From Klebsormidium nitens (lineage: Eukaryota; Plantae; Klebsormidiophyceae), in NCBI GenBank assembly GCA_000708835.1, contig DF237307.1, forward strand, positions 1 through 64,000: 64,000 bases of DNA, in the 5' to 3' direction. Below are positions 55,971-64,000 of the stretch, in pieces. Position 1 is the first letter of the stretch; every line of letters begins with the position of its first letter. The notes under the pieces are model-generated. The model was not told the DNA's origin. It did no database searches and saw only the letters and a list, made by a program, of their open reading frames with translations. The position numbers and the translations under genes are program-made.

Positions 55971-57427
55971 CTAAAGTAGGCAATCAATAGGGCTATTCTG
56001 CATCTCTTGGTGGCTTCGTAAAGCATATCAAGAGCTGCAGCTTGAATTGGACTGAAGCTGCGTGAAACAAAAAGTTTGGTTGGTGACTTAGATAGCAAGT
56101 TCAGTTGCTCACATAAGGTTCGCATATTGAGTCAGTAACTCGACATATGGGCTGCTGCATGATGTTCTCTTTTGATTGGTTCAGTTTGTAGGAGCATAGC
56201 AGCCCATAGACCTGTTGGAAAGCTGGTGCGCAGGCTCCACATCTTAAGATTCAACAATTCGATGGCCTCAATCTTCCCCACTGTGCATAATAATCTCGGT
56301 TGAATGCATCTGGCAAGGTCTGATGAAATCTGATCCCTTCGACAATTTGAAAGCGCGGGCCGGCCCCAGGCTCACTAGCTAAAGCTATATGATGTGTCAA
56401 TTTCTGCACGCATACTAAATCCTTATATACATGCATATGTAGATCAAACGATCCCTGTTTCCCTATAACTTCAGCGTTCTGTACAGCTATCGTTATATCT
56501 ACTTAATCAAGCCATACGTACAGAAAATTGGCAACGTGATCCTGCAATTATAGGCCCGCGGGCCGGCCCAGGTCATGCTGCGGCATTCCAGTGCAGGGCC
56601 CGTCCTGCACTACCCTACCCCGGAGCTGAACGGGCCCTGCGTGACCAATCGTAGAGCTTGCGTGACACCCATAATCGGATCTAGCAGTTGCAATGATGGC
56701 ATAATACCAGGCCTAGTACGCATTTCTTAAGCACGCATACAGCTGCGACACCAGGCTCGTGCATCAGAAGGAATGCACACGCCTGAAGATCCAATACGGA
56801 TGCTCTTGTCGCTTCCAAAATGGATTGAAATGATTAATACATGCAATATAACAAGATGCGGTCCGAACTATAATCACTGTCACTCAAACAATGCCCATAT
56901 TGATGGGTCAATTACTTTAAGCAGCTTTACCTTCCCCACTGAATGAATACTACGCTATGTATGTTCCTTTATCTTCCCCAATAAGATTTACAAGACAAAG
57001 CTAGGCTCGTCACAAAGTGGTTAGCATAATGTATGTGAACTTGTATTTAATTCGATCTGTACAATGATCTATGAAAACGGATTTTGCTCCTGAATCTTTG
57101 GGCTACCCAATCTAAGATGCATTTCGCAAAGAATGATCACCATCAACGTGGCTCTATATCTAGCTTGCCTAGGTTCCTGCGCAGCTCTTCTACTCGGCTG
57201 TCGAAATCAACGGACAAATCTGTACATATGTTCCTTCAAGCGGCTCGCATCAATCTTATCGAAAGTCTTTCATTTGCGGAAAGGACTCGCAGGGGGTATC
57301 CGTGTGCTTGCCAGTCACATAATACAAGGTCTGAGCGTTGCATACGTAAGGATTCTTCAGACCGCATTGCTAAGATCCACCAAACGACCCTCCAGCAATG
57401 TCTCGAAATTCGACACCCGTCAGATCC

Positions 57428-60400
57428 TCAAGCAAGCCCCAACGTCGAACCTACGCGACGAAGCAACTCGTGCCTGAAAGAGTGGAGCCAAAGACCACTT
57501 CAGAAATCGACGTGAGAGAATCGGACTGGGTCAGCTAGGAAGTGCAGATTCCACTGCTAAACAAGCCTCGTAGCCAGCCTGGTAGACAGTCGTGCCCGGA
57601 ACGCGGTGGCTATGCAAGCACGACCAGAGGTGAGGACTTACTGCAAGCGCGCCCTGTCCGTGCCTGCCTGCATGAGCATGCCCTTGTTCTCCTGCGCCCT
57701 CCTGGTCATGACCAACGCACAGATTGATGACGACCGGAAGAGTGCGCATGTTGCACACAAGCGATTGCATCGCAGTGCCAAGAAAAGCAAAATCGAGGAC
57801 AAAGCGACAGTTCCTCAAGATTGACAGGAAAGAACCCCCCAATCCTAGCAATCCTCTCAAGATAAGGCGAAAGGACGAAGAGCAAAACTTTCATCAGGAT
57901 AAGCGCTGATATTGACACCGTGCACATCAGCCCTCAACCTCTGTCATCTAGGAAACAATCCACTGAACGAGATAGTGCTCTTACCTGATCAAGTAAGGCA
58001 CTGCACAGATGAGACGTGACGTCAGATAACAGTCAACCCTTGTTCGCAGATGTGGAATCGCATAGCCTCCAAAGAAAAAAGATTCGCGATCAGACCGCAG
58101 GGCCATCTACTGGATCTACTCGCTGCAACCGGGCGAAGCAGACCCGACACAGGCTGCTATGCTCGACTACAACGGGCAGACAGTCATCGTGCCCCCACTC
58201 ACTGACAGCATCCAGCGAGGCAAACGGGATGAGCTTGGACGCGTTGAAGCCCGAGCGTGCCAGTGCGAGTGAAAGGCCGTCAGCCATGCCCTGCAGGGGG
58301 GGCAGCGGGCAGTGGTGGGGTGAGGCAGCAGGTGGGGGGGCCGGACAGGGGGTCAGAACATCAAAAGTGTGTCGTGGCTTCCGACGCACTCATGGGCAGC
58401 GCCAGCCTGTAAGAACCGTCGTGTGTGCGTCGGTGAGTGTGAGTGTGTTTGCAATGGCCGTGACATTGTTTGAATTTCGCGGAGAACCCTGAGGAGGGGT
58501 CGTGGTGCCATCTGCAAGCGGCCGAGTGCGTGAGTGCGGGGCATGGGGACTAATTGACCGGTCGTGAGGCTGTACCACAAGGGGGCCCGCCACTCACTCG
58601 TGTCTTCCAGACTTCCAAACGGGTGCAGCTTGCTGCACAGATAGCCCGCCTGTCCGATCGCAAGCGAGAGCGCATCGGCCATCCCCTGCAGCAGAAAACG
58701 GTCTCGAGCGAGTGGGTCCTTTGCGGAGACACGGGAGCCGGGGCTTCGACTTTGCCCCAGGTTGAGGAAACGGAAAGGGGGCCGTGTGTCGGCGGAAACG
58801 GCTAGGGGCGAGGAGGGCCGCAATCTGTGCACGCCGCACTCCAAACTGCTGTCCGACACATTGCTGGGCTGCCTGTAAGACGGTGCCTGTCTCACCACTG
58901 ACTCTGGCTTCGTAATGAAATATCTGCCCCGCTCAGCACAGCGTTGCCATTGCATACTTACAAGCGAGTGGCAGAAGAACGACGGACAGACAACTCTTGA
59001 CCAGCAAGGATCGGCCGAAGTCTTGAAACAAAGCTTGCTCCACCAAGATAGGTGGCTCCAGCGACCTCGTGAAAGCGACCTCGCAGCATCCTCCGCCACA
59101 ACTCCCACGGGACACCCCTTTGCATGAGGGTCTTCAGCCGCGTCGATGGCTGGCTGCCTCCGGAGCTTTGCCGAACATGCACTCCCTGGAGCGTGTGGCG
59201 GGCTGTGTGCTGTTTGCTCACCTTGAGCTGTGCGAACTGCAGGCGCTCGTCCTTGCGCGCCAGGCCCAGGGCGTCCGCCGTGCTGATGGCGCGCCGCACG
59301 GACGCCGCGTTGTGGCTGGCCAGCACTACCTGCACCCACACCACCACCGCTCAACTCAGCGGCCATGCCGGAGCCAGCACATCACACGTGTCCCGCGGCT
59401 CATCCTCGTGCACACAAACGTTCCCACAATTGCAGCGCAATTTGCCGTTCGACTTTGAAAGCGGCTGGCACGGCATGCCCGCCATGGCCTCTCCCCAGAC
59501 CTCTGTGAGGGGCTTACCGCATTGCTTTTGGCGCTCTTCGCTGCGGTCTCGAGCATGAGGCGCGCACAGCGATCGTAGTTGGCATGCGTGGCCTCGATCC
59601 CGGCCTGGATGGGGGTCTCGTAGCTGCCCGCTGCCGCGCGCTGTGTCTCCTTCACAATGTACGCACCTGCAGGCAGCAAGGTCAACCAGGGGCGGCAGGA
59701 ATGAGGCCAGCGATGTGTCGTGAGCAGGGGGTGCTGACACAGGTTTGCGAGGCCATCAAGGCACCAGCATGACAAGCAACCAGCGCAAATACCGACTGCC
59801 CGCATACGCGTCTTCATGTGATCAGTATTAGAGGAGTGGAGACGTTAGCTGCCCCCTCAGTTATCATGACATCCTAGGAGACGAGCCCAGAGCAGCCGGC
59901 TGCGCTGACCTCTGACGAGCTTGGCCGCAAAGCCAACGTTGGCGCTGCGGGCGGCCTGGATGGCCAGCTGGAGGCGGGGCAGCGTGTCCTTGAGGTAGCA
60001 CTGGAACGTGTTCACCACCAGCGGGAAGTCGTGATTGAACTCCAGCGCAGCCACACCCGCCAGATAGTCAATGGCAGGCTGCAACAACGTGCATACGGAG
60101 ACTGTCAGCAGAGCTAGACACCCCAGTCGACCGCAGTTAGAGCAGGGCATGCTCAGAACAGATCCAGCATTGTGGCAGGGCACAGCTCAAACTCATTGCT
60201 CTTGCTCCCGCTTGGTGGTGCGGCGAGGCATAGAAGGTACCTGGACGGAGAAGTACTCGGCGTCGATGAGCAGGGGCAGGTGCAGGTCATGGCACGCCCG
60301 GCACACCGCGCGCAGCCGCTCCAGGCACTCCTCCAAGCTCTGCACCTCTTCAGGGGACAGCGGGGCAGGCTCCGCTGCAGCCAGGCACAAGGGACTCAGT

Positions 60401-62143
60401 CGCTGTATCCAGCAGAGGTGAGGCCCTAAGAAGACAGCTGCTATGCGTGAGAGTCACCAGCGTATTTCTACGACGCCGAGATCCAAGCGCGTCCAAGCAT
60501 TTGATGGATTCCTGTAAGAATTGTTTCGGACCCCTCCATTTCAGGTGCCTTAGGCCCTGGCGCTCACCCTGGGCGGGGAGGATGCTGCCGGGGGCCAGCA
60601 CGGGGAAGGAGGGCCGCTTCCAGGGGAGGTCCACCGATGGGTGCTGATGCTGCCAGCGCAACAGGGCACTGCCACAACAACGACAACAAAGAAGGGGGCC
60701 TCAGGCAGAGTCAGGAGAATGCTTGCAAAAATTCCTTCAATAAGGGGAAAGGACTTCTGACAGAGCGCTGTTTGAGAGTGCTAGCAGGACTGAAACTAAC
60801 CATGCCAGCTGACTCCAGTGGTGTTAGACACAAGGTGGCGCCAACTAACCTCGCTCGCTCCAAGACAGGCAGGGGCACAAACGAGGTGATCTTGACAACG
60901 GAATGGCTGGAGCAGTGGCGTGGTAGGGCGGCCACATGGCGCAGCGTCTCCAGGTTGCCAGCCAGGTTCTTGTCACAAGTAGCCGCGTCCATCGCATCCT
61001 CAACACTGCAAAAGCAAGGAAGAAAAGATCTCAACGGCAACTCACCTTGCAACTAAGTTCAGTTGACCCCTGTGTGGTCAACAACCCTCTAAAATATTGG
61101 CGCCAGCAGTTGTCATTGAGCAGAAACCGAAACATCACCACATAACTTATGCCTTCATAAGCCTTGCAAGAAAGCGACCAATCAACCAATATTATGTAAA
61201 CCTCATAGTCGTGCTCAAAGTAAAAAACTGGGAGATCCTCAGCTTTGTGCAGGAAATGACATGACTCGCTTTTGCCGCGCACCTGTAATCCAGGATGCTC
61301 CTCAAACCCAATTCTGAAGTTCTCAAAAGGGTCGCTTTGGCCTCCTCAATTGTGCCTCCTGCGTGGATTCGAAGTGAAGTGAGAGATGGGGTCCGACAAC
61401 ATGCAAAGGCAGGCCAGCAGCTTGCACAGGACATGCCAACCGTATCTATGACGTGGAATTCGATCCCTGCGATTAGATGCCTTGCCTGAGTTCCAGGGGC
61501 GGCCAAACCCCACCTGAGAAGCAGGCCCCTATAGGACTGCCACCTGCTACCCGACAGGGTTGACAGGGATGCAAGAAGACGCTTGGGCCACCGCATGAGA
61601 AGTGAGCCTTCAAAGGAACATCACTCCCTTTCTCAGACCTCTCGGACCACGACCTCCATAAAGAAGCTACATAATCGTGTGCCGGCACTTACCCGCACAG
61701 AAGTGAGAATATGCTGTCCTCCGCACAACCCAATTCACAGGTGCTGCAAACAACTTGTTCTTCATAAGGTCTGACATCAGTAACTTTGAGCTTGCATCCA
61801 CCATGAGCGAACTTCCCACCAATGACAGATTAAACACCCCTTTTGCAAGTTCTCCTGTGCTGAGGGCAGAGTAAAGTCTCTCAGTGTCCTCCAAATTCAA
61901 AGGATCTGCGGAGCAGGCCGCCTGATCTGCTGCTTGAAAGGACCCTGATCCAAAATCGTCAAAGGACGCTGTTCCCACTGGCCCTAGCTTGGGTGCGGTA
62001 CTCTCAGGGGCAGGCTTTGAGGCCACCAACCCTCCATGGATGTCCCTGCGACAGCAATCAATGATTCCAACGCGTGGGCGGACGTGGCGAGCAACCTGCA
62101 CCTCCAACAACTTTCCCAGACCAGCCATCGGACCGGGAGCCAT
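57428..62143 (-). CDS. ProDH: Proline dehydrogenase (proline oxidase), mitochondrial, with two alternative active-site exons
   Basis: VRRTAYSHFCA|GGTIEEA..GLRSILDY|SVEDA, VVKITS, LERLRAVC..LLIDAEYFSVQ|PAIDYL..NTFQCYLKD..KLVRG|AYIVKE..TPIQ..THANYDRC, VVLASHN, LQFAQLK|GMAD..|MPYLIR|RAQENKG..|HELLRRVGSTLGLA* (TGA 57428-57430). Start could also be the upstream in-frame ATG at 62215. Confidence 0.93.
57985..58000 (-). other. ProDH 16-nt microexon (TG CCT TAC TTG ATC AG = (M)PYLI(R))
   Basis: tgtgcag|TGCCTTACTTGATCAG|gtaaga. It supplies the otherwise missing PYLxR of the conserved PYLxRR motif, with matching phases on both sides. Confidence 0.88.
58203..58290 (-). other. ProDH alternative exon B (88 nt): GMADGLSLALARSGFNASKLIPFASLDAV + A
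   Basis: Acceptor cccccctgcag|GGCATG, donor GTCA|gtgagtgg. Open frame, phase 0 in and phase 1 out. Confidence 0.85.
58598..58685 (-). other. ProDH alternative exon A (88 nt): GMADALSLAIGQAGYLCSKLHPFGSLEDT + A
   Basis: Acceptor ttttctgctgcag|GGGATG, donor ACGA|gtgagtgg. Open frame, phase 0 in and phase 1 out. Confidence 0.85.
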
Positions 62144-62270
62144 GAATGCTGCCAGCGCTACGATAGTGAAGCATTGACTTTGGAGATGCACCAAGAAAGT
62201 GATCCTGTTCTGCATGCGCGGGCGCCTCTTTGCAATTCTCTTCTGTACCGGTACGTCACTCACTTGGAAA

Positions 62271-62279
62271 TTAGGGTTT
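62271..62279 (-). promoter_or_regulatory. Telo-box (AAACCCTAA) upstream of ProDH
   Basis: ttagggttt on the + strand equals AAACCCTAA on the - strand, about 130 bp upstream of the inferred ATG. Confidence 0.35.
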
Positions 62280-63239
62280 GGTCATGGTGGTCTCTCGCTG
62301 TAGGTTTGAGTATTTGCCGATACGAGAGAGACCGATACGACCGTAGATTGACAAGACGCTGGAGGTCGGCCTCGAGGCTCGACCGTCCGATAGGATCAGC
62401 TGCGACCTCTGGGGGGCCGCAATGATCTGTCGACACAAGGTATGTTGACACAAGGTATGTTGCTATGTAATTGGCATTGCATGATCTTTCTTCCCCATTT
62501 CCTCAGCCCCTTCGAGTATAATTTATATGATGCTTCCACCATATCTACCAGATGTCCGAGTCAGATGACAGTGTACTTGATCAGTGTAATACTGTAAAAG
62601 CTCATGGCAAACTTGCCTCGTGATAGCAGCTACCTAATTCAGATGGAACATGCAACGTCGAACTTCGACATGGGCCGGGATTCGTTTTAGACCCATGTTG
62701 AATAATTGGTGGCTCGCTGTCAGTTCAAGCACTGCCTAGTTCGGGCCGGGCCCGTTAACCACCACTGCGGGGCTGCAAAGACGATTGAGCAATCGATCTG
62801 CCAGTAAAGTCACATGTGGCAGGGCCTCCGTAGCCGGAGCCACCAAGATGATTAGGCATCGCATGCATATAGTGACTAGATACGGTAGCTTGTACGAAAC
62901 ATGCATAAAAAATCAGCCAGTGCATTGTTGACCGTCCTACATGTTAGGGCCGCGCATGGCAATGTAGGTACGTACATCACAGAATGATGTGCTACTAAGT
63001 TCGAGCTCACGTGTGCAAGATCTTACTAGTTCCACGGTTTCCTCGGATGAGAACACGATGGAAACGAGGCAAGGTCACCATTCACCACAAACAGTCTCGA
63101 ATAAGCAGAACATAAAGTTGGGCCGGAGATTTAGTTGACCCGAGAAGCTTGGCACGAGTGGAGCAGATACGAGTCGAGTTCACTCATGTTCATGCTCTCT
63201 GTAATCAGGTTGAGGCTTAAAAGAGGTGGCACCGTTGTT

Positions 63240-64000
63240 CTAGCCAGCATTCAAGTGTCGTTGTCTCGTCTCCTCTTTCCTTAACCCCTCCTGCCTTCTC
63301 TCTCGATAGAAGCTCCGCGTTCTAAGAGCTAGCCAGCCATTGACTACGCTGCCGAGCGCACACACTCCTGCCAGGATCAGGAAGGTGAGTCGAAAACAAT
63401 GCGCCCCGCTACAGGTGGGTGGACAGTCTGGTCGAAGAGCCGGCGCTCTCCCTCCCCGGCTGCCCGGCTCCGCCGCTACAGCTGACGCCCAAGCCCCTGC
63501 ACGAGATGCCCGGGCCTGCCTCTTGGGCCGTCCTCCATGCAGACCCCAGCTCTCGTCCGGTTTGCCTTCAACGGCCAGCATGAAAGGCGTGGTAGCTGTG
63601 CTAACTAGCTTCCGGCTGAGCGTGCAGCTGCCGCTGGACTCGGCCGGCCAGGCCGCTCGTCGTTGTCGCCTGGCCTCCTTGTCGTAGATCCAACCTGTTC
63701 ACTCACCGTTATCAAACAACTCCCTCTACTTCGACTGGGTTGCTGTGAAACTTGTGGACGGCCACTTGAAGGCTTCACGTCCTTGATACGGCCGCGGAGT
63801 TAGAGAGCGAGGGGCAGACCTGCTGCCTCCGGGCAGAGTCCCGCTGGTGGCAGCGCGAGGCTGGAGTACGGGGCGTCACCTGCTAGGCGTGCCGAGAGGA
63901 GGTACGTGGAGGCGGGGCTGCCCATGGCGAGCACGTTGTAGAGCGTGCCGAAGTGCGCCAGCCCGAACAGCTCGCTGGCCGTGGCGGCCATGAGCGCCCA
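63240..64000 (-). CDS. 3' end of a nodulin-like / NFD4-type major facilitator transporter (runs off the window)
   Basis: ALMAATASELFGLAHFGTLYNVLAMGSPASTYLLSARLA|GWIYDKEARRQ...CSGAHCFRLTFLILAGVCALGSVVNGWLALRTRSFY. Confidence 0.85.

What the first reader, a model, noticed from the sequence alone, without database searches (positions are those of the whole stretch)
58203..58685. Mutually exclusive tandem exons swap the active-site segment of proline dehydrogenase
Seen in sequence: two exons of exactly 88 nt, each with a canonical polypyrimidine-cag acceptor and the same A|gtgagtgg donor, separated by a 307-bp intron. They encode homologous peptides, GMADALSLAIGQAGYLCSKLHPFGSLEDT and GMADGLSLALARSGFNASKLIPFASLDAV (16 of 29 identical). 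Both are stop-free despite heavy nucleotide divergence. Including both gives A|GG CAT GGC TGA (stop). Skipping both gives AAG|TGC CTT ACT TGA (stop). Only one-of-two splicing yields enzyme. Established: this segment spans beta7-alpha7-beta8 of the ProDH barrel, which lines the FAD and substrate site, and mutually exclusive exons are common in animals but rare in plants. Inference: one gene makes two ProDH isoenzymes with different catalytic, substrate or regulatory properties, where angiosperms use paralogs (ProDH1/ProDH2). From memory, exon A resembles the animal-type SLxLGQAGY..PYGSLE segment and exon B the plant-type GLSLxLxxxGFNxSK segment. I know of no description of this arrangement.
Basis: partly seen in the sequence, partly recalled or inferred. 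Interest (0 to 1): 0.9.

Follow-up and report, generated by a model that had tools for sequence, protein, structure and literature searches.

The report
Two alternative exons in algal proline dehydrogenase
The proline dehydrogenase gene of the streptophyte alga Klebsormidium nitens carries two tandem copies of one 88-base exon; only one can be used per mRNA, both have been kept as working protein code in four related algae, but public RNA data show only the first copy in mature mRNA.

Summary
On the minus strand, exon A (58685-58598) and exon B (58290-58203) are both 88 nt. They share the same phase, a ctgcag|GG acceptor and an A|gtgagtgg donor, and lie 307 nt apart. Their peptides match at 16 of 29 residues. 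Using both, or neither, gives a stop within four codons.

The window is Klebsormidium nitens. The public protein GAQ87520.1 wrongly fuses both exons through 47 nt of intron.

Exon B is not a dead copy. Four independent assemblies (this window and three relatives) all keep both exons at 88 nt with intact splice sites. Exon B has dN 0 and dS 0.24, like the rest of the gene, while the flanking introns are only 55-70% identical.

RNA contigs from eight runs, and a relative's metatranscriptome mRNA, all carry exon A. Exon B was seen only with its donor joined to the next 16-nt microexon, at about 8% depth and with the upstream intron retained. No exon 8-to-B junction was found.

Most likely this is a real mutually exclusive pair, with A the default and B minor or conditional (confidence about 0.65). 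The "animal-type versus plant-type" idea is not supported, because the duplication is lineage-specific. Both exons carry Leu where every other homologue examined has the substrate-gating Tyr. Other first-stage notes list further exon pairs of this kind in this genome; none was checked.

The parts
57428..62143 (-). Whole proline dehydrogenase coding region: 13 exons and 517 aa with either alternative exon, from ATG 62143-62141 to stop 57430-57428.
   Evidence: Gene model built. Splice junctions confirmed by RNA contigs. Pfam PF01619 hits. Exons match K. nitens GAQ87520.1 exactly.
59222..59329 (-). Constitutive exon 8. It ends with ...QFAQLK (strand beta7), and its donor is CTCAAG|gtgagc.
   Evidence: Joint 59221->58684/5 in all eight runs. 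AF2 strand at residues 442-447.
58598..58685 (-). Alternative exon A, 88 nt, phase 0, the default exon. It encodes GMADALSLAIGQAGYLCSKLHPFGSLEDT plus the first base of the next codon.
   Evidence: Present in the dominant mRNA contigs of eight runs and in a relative's metatranscriptome mRNA, L003. Conserved in four taxa with dN 0.047 and dS 0.28-0.35.
58291..58597 (-). Intron of 307 nt between A and B. It is retained in roughly 7-25% of transcripts together with the downstream introns. It contains the alternative GT (58550-58549) used by the public fused gene model.
   Evidence: Unspliced contigs 57675-58559 and 57675-58627 at depth 18-75, against 70-1000 for exons. Only 55-72% identical between taxa. 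No RNA joint from 58551 to 58290.
58203..58290 (-). Alternative exon B, 88 nt, phase 0. It encodes GMADGLSLALARSGFNASKLIPFASLDAV plus the first base of the next codon.
   Evidence: Sharp conservation peak. The peptide is identical in three taxa, with one Ala/Ser change in a fourth. Seven of eight variable sites are synonymous, there are no indels, and the splice sites are kept. Its donor is joined to the microexon in run X29.
57985..58000 (-). Constitutive 16-nt microexon TGCCTTACTTGATCAG. With the last base of A or B it encodes M-P-Y-L-I-(R).
   Evidence: It appears as the 'letters between' in the joint 58598->57701/8 in all eight runs. 15-16 of 16 bases are conserved in relatives.
57642..57701 (-). 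Constitutive exon 11. It encodes (R)RAQENKGMLMQAGTDRARLQ, the conserved YLxRRxxEN substrate-binding motif of helix alpha8.
   Evidence: aligned to ylvrrllen of PutA.

Best explanation
This is a real pair of mutually exclusive exons that arose by tandem duplication of one 88-nt exon in the Klebsormidium lineage. After exon 8, the spliceosome joins either exon A or exon B to the following 16-nt microexon. Because 88 is not a multiple of three, an mRNA with both or neither exon hits a stop within four codons and loses the essential alpha8 Arg-Arg motif. Such an mRNA would probably be removed by nonsense-mediated decay (inferred). Only the one-of-two products encode a full 517-aa enzyme. Exon A is the default under all sampled conditions. 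Exon B is a minor or condition-specific choice whose protein product is nevertheless under strong purifying selection. The swapped 29-30 residues form helix alpha7, strand beta8 and the first turn of alpha8 of the FAD (beta/alpha)8 barrel. They include the position of the substrate-gating Tyr of PutA (E. coli Tyr540), which is Leu in both forms, and its neighbours (His versus Ile; Gly versus Ala). The two products are therefore expected to be isoenzymes differing near the substrate and flavin site.

Shown: the anatomy, the frame logic, selection on both exons, use of A, and activity of the B donor. Inferred: a productive B-only mRNA, NMD of A+B, and functional difference between the isoenzymes.
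For: - Anatomy and frame logic.
- Homology of A and B: E 6e-8, and only two copies in the window.
- Four independent assemblies (window, L001, L002, L009) keep both exons at exactly 88 nt with intact ctgcag acceptors and gt(g/a)agtgg donors. Their introns are only 55-72% identical.
- Exon B: dS 0.24 and dN 0, against gene-wide dS 0.39 and omega 0.10. Six of six substitutions among three taxa are synonymous (P about 3e-4 under neutrality). The chance of 5 or fewer differences in 88 nt at intron rates is 1e-7 to 1e-14. In four taxa there are seven synonymous changes and one conservative Ala/Ser change.
- The conserved block coincides with the exon B borders.
- The antisense ORF is broken in relatives, and the changes would be non-synonymous in it.
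- The exon B donor is joined to the microexon in run X29. The 14 loose letters are the exact reverse complement of the first 14 nt of the microexon, at depth 5.4 against 67.6 for the main mRNA. In that run the B-microexon intron has zero coverage.
- The stretch between exon A and exon 11 is the most retained in the part of the gene that was laid: 7-25%, against 1-4% for the exon 8-A intron. That fits a decision point.
- Structural placement of the segment.
Against: - No contig joins exon 8 (or exon A) to the exon B acceptor in eight RNA runs from six or more studies.
- The only full-length relative mRNA is the A form.
- The B-microexon junction contig still carries at least 80 nt of the upstream intron. 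Because the exon 8-A intron is almost fully spliced in the same runs, those molecules may be unproductive A-intron-B forms.
- X29 and X30 look like one data set filed twice, so the junction is a single independent observation.
- Logan contigs drop rare variants, so absence is weak evidence, but so is presence at 8%.
- No B-isoform protein is in the protein collection. That collection also lacks the abundant A form from these runs, so this is uninformative.
- Exon B carries Ala at a Gly that is invariant in 25 aligned homologues.
Confidence: 0.65

Rival explanations
1. Exon B is a regulatory 'poison' exon or splicing decoy. It would be included together with A, or with the A-B intron retained, to make a stop-containing mRNA that lowers enzyme output. 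It would never be translated as part of the enzyme.
For: The only exon B junction seen keeps the upstream intron. The exon 8-A intron is nearly fully spliced in the same RNA, so B-donor use would mostly give A-containing products with a premature stop. The region is unusually retained. Four conserved stems of 9 bp or more involve the A and B splice sites, against 0.05 expected in column shuffles.
Against: In an A+B mRNA, exon B is read in another frame and stops at its third codon. That cannot explain substitutions that are synonymous in the B-only frame (dN 0, dS 0.24), nor the exact 88-nt length. A purely RNA-level element should not show normal synonymous divergence with zero amino-acid change. 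The predicted folds are no more stable than shuffles (z +1.31 and -1.29), and no compensatory pair changes were found.
Confidence: 0.12
2. Exon B is a recently silenced duplicate. It was used until recently, or is still used in sister species, but no longer contributes to K. nitens mRNA.
For: No exon 8-to-B junction in eight runs. There is Ala at the invariant Gly position.
Against: The K. nitens copy itself has no amino-acid change relative to two other taxa. Its acceptor tract and donor are intact, and its donor is demonstrably used. Silencing would have to be very recent.
Confidence: 0.1
3. The public gene model is right: one protein contains both segments in tandem. In that model exon A is extended by 47 nt of intron to a downstream GT and then joined to exon B, as in GAQ87520.1.
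For: The deposited protein P0053 reads ...SLEDT-SEWRAPLWYSLTTGQL-GMADGL.... The frame is open.
Against: No RNA contig shows a 58551->58290 joint. All main contigs join 58598 directly to the microexon, and so does the relative's mRNA. The 47-nt stretch is poorly conserved. Two alpha7-beta8 units do not fit a (beta/alpha)8 barrel. The same model also lacks the first 126 residues.
Confidence: 0.02
4. Exon B serves a separate short transcript that starts inside the A-B intron. It would be translated from the Met at codon 2 of exon B into a peptide of about 68 aa comprising the C-terminal end of the enzyme.
For: The X29 contig (upstream intron + exon B + microexon) has the shape such a transcript would have. 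Metagenome gene callers start an ORF at this Met (P0026).
Against: In deeper runs the upstream intron is contiguous with exon A (records 7 and 18), so this looks like retention, not a new start. The contig end at 58370 is explained by a graph bubble around the SNP at 58340. The GMAD Met is an ancestral family motif also present in exon A. The conserved acceptor tract would not be needed.
Confidence: 0.03

Closest known systems
Mutually exclusive exons born by tandem exon duplication that swap part of an enzyme's active region (examples recalled from memory: pyruvate kinase PKM exons 9/10; ATE1 exons 7a/7b, PMC7797038; helminth COQ-2 alternative exons, PMC8659336)
   Same: Adjacent homologous exons of equal length and phase, each with its own splice sites. 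Exactly one is needed for an intact protein, and the swapped piece lies next to the catalytic site.
   Different: The host is a streptophyte alga, where such pairs are hardly documented (PMC3923563 states that reports in plants are rare). Use of the second exon in mature mRNA is not yet shown. No competing-RNA-structure mechanism could be demonstrated; the reading frame alone enforces exclusivity.
Plant-type mitochondrial proline dehydrogenase (Arabidopsis ProDH1/ProDH2 family; Pfam PF01619; PutA ProDH domain structures 4NM9, 5UR2, 1TIW)
   Same: Same fold and motifs, including the (beta/alpha)8 barrel and YLxRRxxEN. The closest sequence relatives are streptophyte ProDHs at 41-49% identity.
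   Different: In the relatives examined at the genomic level, this segment is a single copy and not a separate 88-nt exon. Angiosperms diversify through paralogous genes (from memory). About 40 homologues all have K-Y and P-(F/Y)-G here, whereas both Klebsormidium exons have Leu at the Tyr position and exon B has Ala at the Gly.
E. coli PutA Tyr540 variants (PDB 3E2Q, Y540S with trans-4-hydroxy-L-proline; Ostrander et al. 2009, as cited in PMC3718742)
   Same: The residue aligned with this Tyr lies inside the alternative exon and is not Tyr in either form. In PutA, this Tyr restricts the site to proline over hydroxyproline (PMC3718742).
   Different: Here the replacement is Leu, not Ser or Ala. 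No activity data exist, and any change of substrate range is speculation.

Membership tests
Proline dehydrogenase (PF01619, PutA-type FAD barrel) | Sequence match to the Pro_dh family profile | tested here: met
   Exons 6, 7 and 8 each hit PF01619 (E 5e-7, 2e-8, 1.6e-4). phmmer finds PutA chains at E 1e-14.
Proline dehydrogenase (PF01619, PutA-type FAD barrel) | (beta/alpha)8 barrel fold like solved ProDH domains | tested here: met
   The AF2 model of the relative's A isoform has pLDDT 84.9 and pTM 0.83, with eight strands. Foldseek top hits are all PutA ProDH domains at E 1e-17 to 1e-13.
Proline dehydrogenase (PF01619, PutA-type FAD barrel) | alpha8 motif YLxRRxxEN with the substrate-binding Arg pair | tested here: met
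   PYLIRRAQEN is encoded by the microexon plus exon 11 and aligns to ylvrrllen of PutA.
Proline dehydrogenase (PF01619, PutA-type FAD barrel) | Conserved beta8 Tyr (E. coli PutA Tyr540) that gates proline versus hydroxyproline | tested here: not met
   Leu in exon A (aligned to Tyr of 5UR2 and 4NM9) and Leu at the same position in exon B. About 40 homologues all have Tyr. This Tyr is a specificity determinant, not a family-defining residue, so the gene is still filed as a ProDH, possibly with altered specificity.
Proline dehydrogenase (PF01619, PutA-type FAD barrel) | FAD-dependent oxidation of proline | not testable with these tools
   Needs an enzyme assay.
Mutually exclusive exons from tandem exon duplication | Neighbouring exons of the same length and phase with significant sequence homology | tested here: met
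   88 nt each, phase 0, 16 of 29 aa identical, E 6e-8.
Mutually exclusive exons from tandem exon duplication | Both have functional splice sites | tested here: inconclusive
   Both consensus sites are present and conserved in four taxa. The A acceptor and donor, and the B donor, are seen in RNA. Use of the B acceptor was not observed.
Mutually exclusive exons from tandem exon duplication | Including both or neither destroys the product | tested here: met
   Stops after 3 codons (A+B) and 3 codons (neither).
Mutually exclusive exons from tandem exon duplication | Each exon found alone in mature mRNA | tested here: inconclusive
   A: yes, in eight runs and a relative's mRNA. B: only the B|microexon joint, with the upstream intron retained, in one data set. 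The contigs used drop rare variants.
Mutually exclusive exons from tandem exon duplication | Both copies kept by purifying selection on the protein | tested here: met
   A: dN 0.047, dS 0.28-0.35. B: dN 0, dS 0.24. Rest of the gene: omega 0.10.
Mutually exclusive exons from tandem exon duplication | A dedicated exclusivity mechanism (competing RNA structures, steric hindrance, incompatible spliceosomes) | tested here: inconclusive
   The 307-nt intron rules out steric hindrance, and both introns are GT-AG. Conserved stems exist, but without compensatory changes or unusual stability. Frame plus presumed NMD is the only mechanism evident.

The most novel reading that the evidence does not exclude
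Klebsormidium makes two proline dehydrogenase isoenzymes from one gene by frame-enforced mutually exclusive splicing. The B form would be switched on under conditions not yet sampled, for example desiccation and recovery, cold or dark, or proline or hydroxyproline supply. Both forms lack the otherwise universal substrate-gating Tyr, so the pair would differ in substrate range or kinetics. The gene could also be one instance of an unusually large set of tandem-exon alternative pairs in this genome; other first-stage notes list CNGC, CpcT lyase, GH29 fucosidase, a kinase, DTC carrier and MATE transporter candidates, none of them checked.
Probability: 0.3. Interest if true: 0.8.

Novelty: new member of a known kind. 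Interest (0 to 1): 0.6.

Why it matters
Exon-duplication-based mutually exclusive splicing is a classic animal way of making enzyme and channel variants, and it is barely documented in the plant lineage. A selection-supported case in Klebsormidium, an early-diverging relative of land plants, would show that this route to protein diversity existed in streptophytes. There it would sit alongside the gene-paralogue route that flowering plants use for ProDH1/ProDH2. The swapped piece is next to the substrate and flavin site of an enzyme central to osmotic-stress recovery, in an alga known for desiccation tolerance. Both versions lack a Tyr thought to define proline specificity. There is also a practical result: the public protein GAQ87520.1 is mis-modelled. 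It has both exons fused through intron sequence and is truncated at the N-terminus, which would mislead comparative and structural work.

Tried and rejected
- Antisense coding as the cause of exon B conservation. The + strand ORF 58016-58492 shares third positions with exon B, but it is interrupted by stops and frameshifts in L001 and L002, and the exon B changes are non-synonymous in it. Rejected.
- Competing or hairpin RNA structures. Four three-way conserved stems of 9 bp or more were found. They pair the 3' part of exon B with the B donor, the 5' part of exon B with the B donor, the A acceptor with the B acceptor tract, and 58972-58964 with the A donor. Column shuffles give 0.05. However, RNAalifold found no compensatory pairs, and single-sequence folds are no better than shuffles (z +1.31 for B, -1.29 for A). 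This stays a lead only.
- Searching protein collections for a B-isoform product. None was found, but the abundant A form of these RNA runs is absent too, so the result is uninformative.
- A metagenome scan with exon 6 gave one useful spliced mRNA (L003) and one spurious locus (L004).
- More distant genomic relatives (L005, L006, Closterium L008) have one copy only, and there the segment is not a separate exon. The duplication is therefore lineage-specific.
- A third, decayed copy in the window was looked for and not found.
- Ostrander et al. 2009 (PMC2665022) is not held. Its claim is cited through PMC3718742 and the title of PDB entry 3E2Q.
Full report
**Observation**

The gene lies on the minus strand. 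I read 57000-64000 and built a 13-exon model from ATG 62143 to stop 57428. RNA contigs later confirmed its junctions.

Exon A (58685-58598) and exon B (58290-58203) are each 88 nt and start in phase 0. Both have ...ctgcag|GG acceptors behind pyrimidine tracts and identical A|gtgagtgg donors. A 307-nt intron separates them.

The peptides share 16 of 29 residues. The DNA shares 49 of 88 bases, with third codon positions near saturation at 10 of 29. The window holds no third copy, and the cross-match has E 6e-8.

With either exon the product is 517 aa. With both it ends ...EDTRHG*, and with neither it ends ...QLKCLT*.

**What the gene is**

Three exons hit Pfam Pro_dh. The nearest full-length relatives are streptophyte proline dehydrogenases from Marchantia, Closterium, Chlorokybus, Mesotaenium and Wollemia.

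The window's exons match Klebsormidium nitens GAQ87520.1 exactly. That deposited model is 436 aa and starts at Met127 of my model. It contains both exons in series: exon A is run on for 47 nt into the intron (SEWRAPLWYSLTTGQL) to a GT at 58550, then joined to exon B. No RNA contig supports that junction.

**RNA evidence**

The available runs are Logan contigs, not raw reads, so rare forms can be lost.

In four deep runs from four studies (X1, X5, X6, X9), the dominant contigs have depth 70-1000. They join 59222 to 58685 (exon A), and 58598 to the 16-nt microexon (58000-57985) and on to 57701.

Four further runs (X16, X17, X29, X30) give 2.0-2.2-kb mRNA contigs with the same A form.

A 1873-nt JGI metatranscriptome contig from a close relative (L003, 93% aa identity) is a complete spliced mRNA, also of the A form.

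In the deep runs, exon B is covered only by unspliced contigs that run from exon A or its intron through B, the microexon and into exon 11. Their depth is 7-25% of the mRNA, against 1-4% for the exon 8-A intron.

In X29, a 182-nt contig of depth 5.4 (main mRNA 67.6) runs from 58370 to the last base of exon B. It then continues with 14 letters that are the exact start of the microexon. The B-microexon intron has no coverage in that run. The exon B donor is therefore used.

The same contig keeps at least 80 nt of the intron upstream of B. Its end at 58370 is 30 nt from a G/A polymorphism at 58340, which is what a k=31 graph bubble would produce. X30 is almost certainly the same data filed twice.

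No contig joins exon 8 or exon A to the exon B acceptor.

**Evolutionary evidence**

Three genomic contigs from relatives were recovered:
- L001, a Logan assembly found through the exon-1 ORF.
- L002, a JGI metagenome found through the ORF that contains exon B.
- L009, a Logan assembly.

In global alignments, constitutive exons are 87-100% identical to the window, except the short last coding exon at 82%. Introns are 55-75% identical and carry many indels. Both A and B are exon-like: 88 nt in all four taxa, no indels, splice sites kept. Exon B is a sharp conservation peak bounded by its splice sites.

Exon B has dS 0.24 and dN 0 against both L001 and L002. Exon A has dS 0.28-0.35 and dN 0.047. 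Exons 1-8 have dS 0.39 and omega 0.10.

Among three taxa, all six exon B substitutions are synonymous: five at third positions and one Leu CTG/TTG. That gives P about 3e-4 for random substitutions. At intron rates, 5 or fewer differences in 88 nt has P 1e-7 to 1e-14. The fourth taxon adds one synonymous change and one Ala/Ser change.

Exon A shows nine synonymous changes, three conservative replacements, and a change of its last base. That last change makes the split codon Leu instead of Met in the relatives.

The antisense ORF over exon B is broken in relatives.

A versus B has dN 0.5 and saturated dS. The duplication is therefore much older than the split of these taxa. Even so, A and B share K-L and S-L/V where about 40 homologues have K-Y and P-V. 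Closterium and two other streptophyte contigs have one copy only, not set off as a separate exon. The duplication arose within the Klebsormidium lineage.

**Where the segment sits**

An AlphaFold2 model of the relative's A isoform, built from 25 aligned sequences, has pLDDT 84.9 and pTM 0.83. It is a (beta/alpha)8 barrel that matches PutA proline dehydrogenase domains.

Strand beta7 (residues 442-447) ends exon 8. The alternative exon (449-477) encodes the loop with the invariant Gly-Met, helix alpha7 (452-460), strand beta8 (465-471) and the first turn of alpha8 (from 474).

The HMMER alignment to PutA 5UR2 and 4NM9 places the Leu of S-K-L-H-P-F-G on the Tyr of (E/L)-Y-A-P-(V/Y)-G. By motif, that Tyr is the E. 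coli PutA Tyr540 position. This Tyr is reported to enforce proline over hydroxyproline (PMC3718742 citing Ostrander et al. 2009; PDB 3E2Q).

Both exons have Leu there. Exon B also has Ala at a Gly that is invariant in the 25-sequence alignment. The two forms further differ at the residue after the Leu (His versus Ile), along alpha7, and at the start of alpha8.

**Reading**

The selection pattern on exon B can only be explained if exon B is translated in its own frame. That requires an mRNA with B and without A.

The RNA data show that this mRNA is at most rare in the sampled cultures. The B donor junctions that were seen may partly belong to unproductive forms. I therefore favour a real mutually exclusive pair with a strong default for A (0.65) over four rivals: a poison-exon or decoy role (0.12), recent silencing (0.10), the fused public model (0.02) and a short internal transcript (0.03).

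How the choice is made is unknown. Steric hindrance and incompatible spliceosome types are excluded by the anatomy. Conserved stems around the splice sites exist but lack statistical or covariation support. Exclusivity at the protein level follows from the frame alone.

**Novelty**

Literature searches found no description of alternative exons in any proline dehydrogenase, nor of this pair. Mutually exclusive exons are said to be rarely reported in plants (PMC3923563).

The mechanism is a known kind, so this is a new member, in an unusual lineage and enzyme. Other first-stage notes list several similar candidate pairs elsewhere in this genome. I did not test them.

Noticed in passing
window 57428-62143 (-): The public K. 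nitens protein GAQ87520.1 (436 aa) is mis-modelled. It starts at Met127 of the RNA-supported ORF. It also strings exon A, 47 nt of intron (to a GT at 58550-58549) and exon B together. No RNA contig shows that junction.
   Followed up: yes
window 58295-58402: A 108-nt piece of the intron just upstream of exon B also occurs, with 1-2 mismatches, inside other RNA contigs (for example a 1576-nt contig in X6, and pieces in X16 and X17). Their flanks on both sides are absent from this window. It may be a dispersed repeat or a second expressed locus carrying this piece. Its borders have no canonical splice signals, and this part of the intron is poorly conserved in relatives.
   Followed up: partly
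window 58340 and 58021: G>A differences appear in RNA contigs of some studies (X6, X16, X17, X29, X30) but not in others (X1, X5, X9). They are probably strain or allelic polymorphisms, and they break the assembly graph near exon B.
   Followed up: no
window 57985-58000 (-): A constitutive 16-nt microexon follows the alternative pair. It is conserved in four taxa and included in every mRNA contig. In Closterium and two other streptophyte contigs, the same coding stretch is not split this way.
   Followed up: partly
window 58629-58627 (exon A) and 58234-58232 (exon B), minus strand: Both alternative exons encode Leu at the position of the active-site Tyr (E. coli PutA Tyr540), which is Tyr in about 40 homologues examined. 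Exon B also has Ala at an otherwise invariant Gly (P-F-A instead of P-F/Y-G).
   Followed up: partly
window 57702-58597: The stretch between exon A and exon 11 (two or three introns, exon B and the microexon) is retained unspliced in 7-25% of transcript depth. That is several-fold more than the exon 8-A intron.
   Followed up: partly
same genome, other windows: Other first-stage notes report many candidate tandem, mutually exclusive exon pairs in this genome (CNGC, CpcT lyase, GH29 fucosidase, MUT9-like kinase, DTC carrier, MATE transporter). If real, the phenomenon may be genome-wide.
   Followed up: no
window 63300-64000 (-): The 3' end of another minus-strand gene lies upstream of the ProDH gene. 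Its reading frames are rich in hydrophobic residues and look like a membrane protein. It was not analysed.
   Followed up: no
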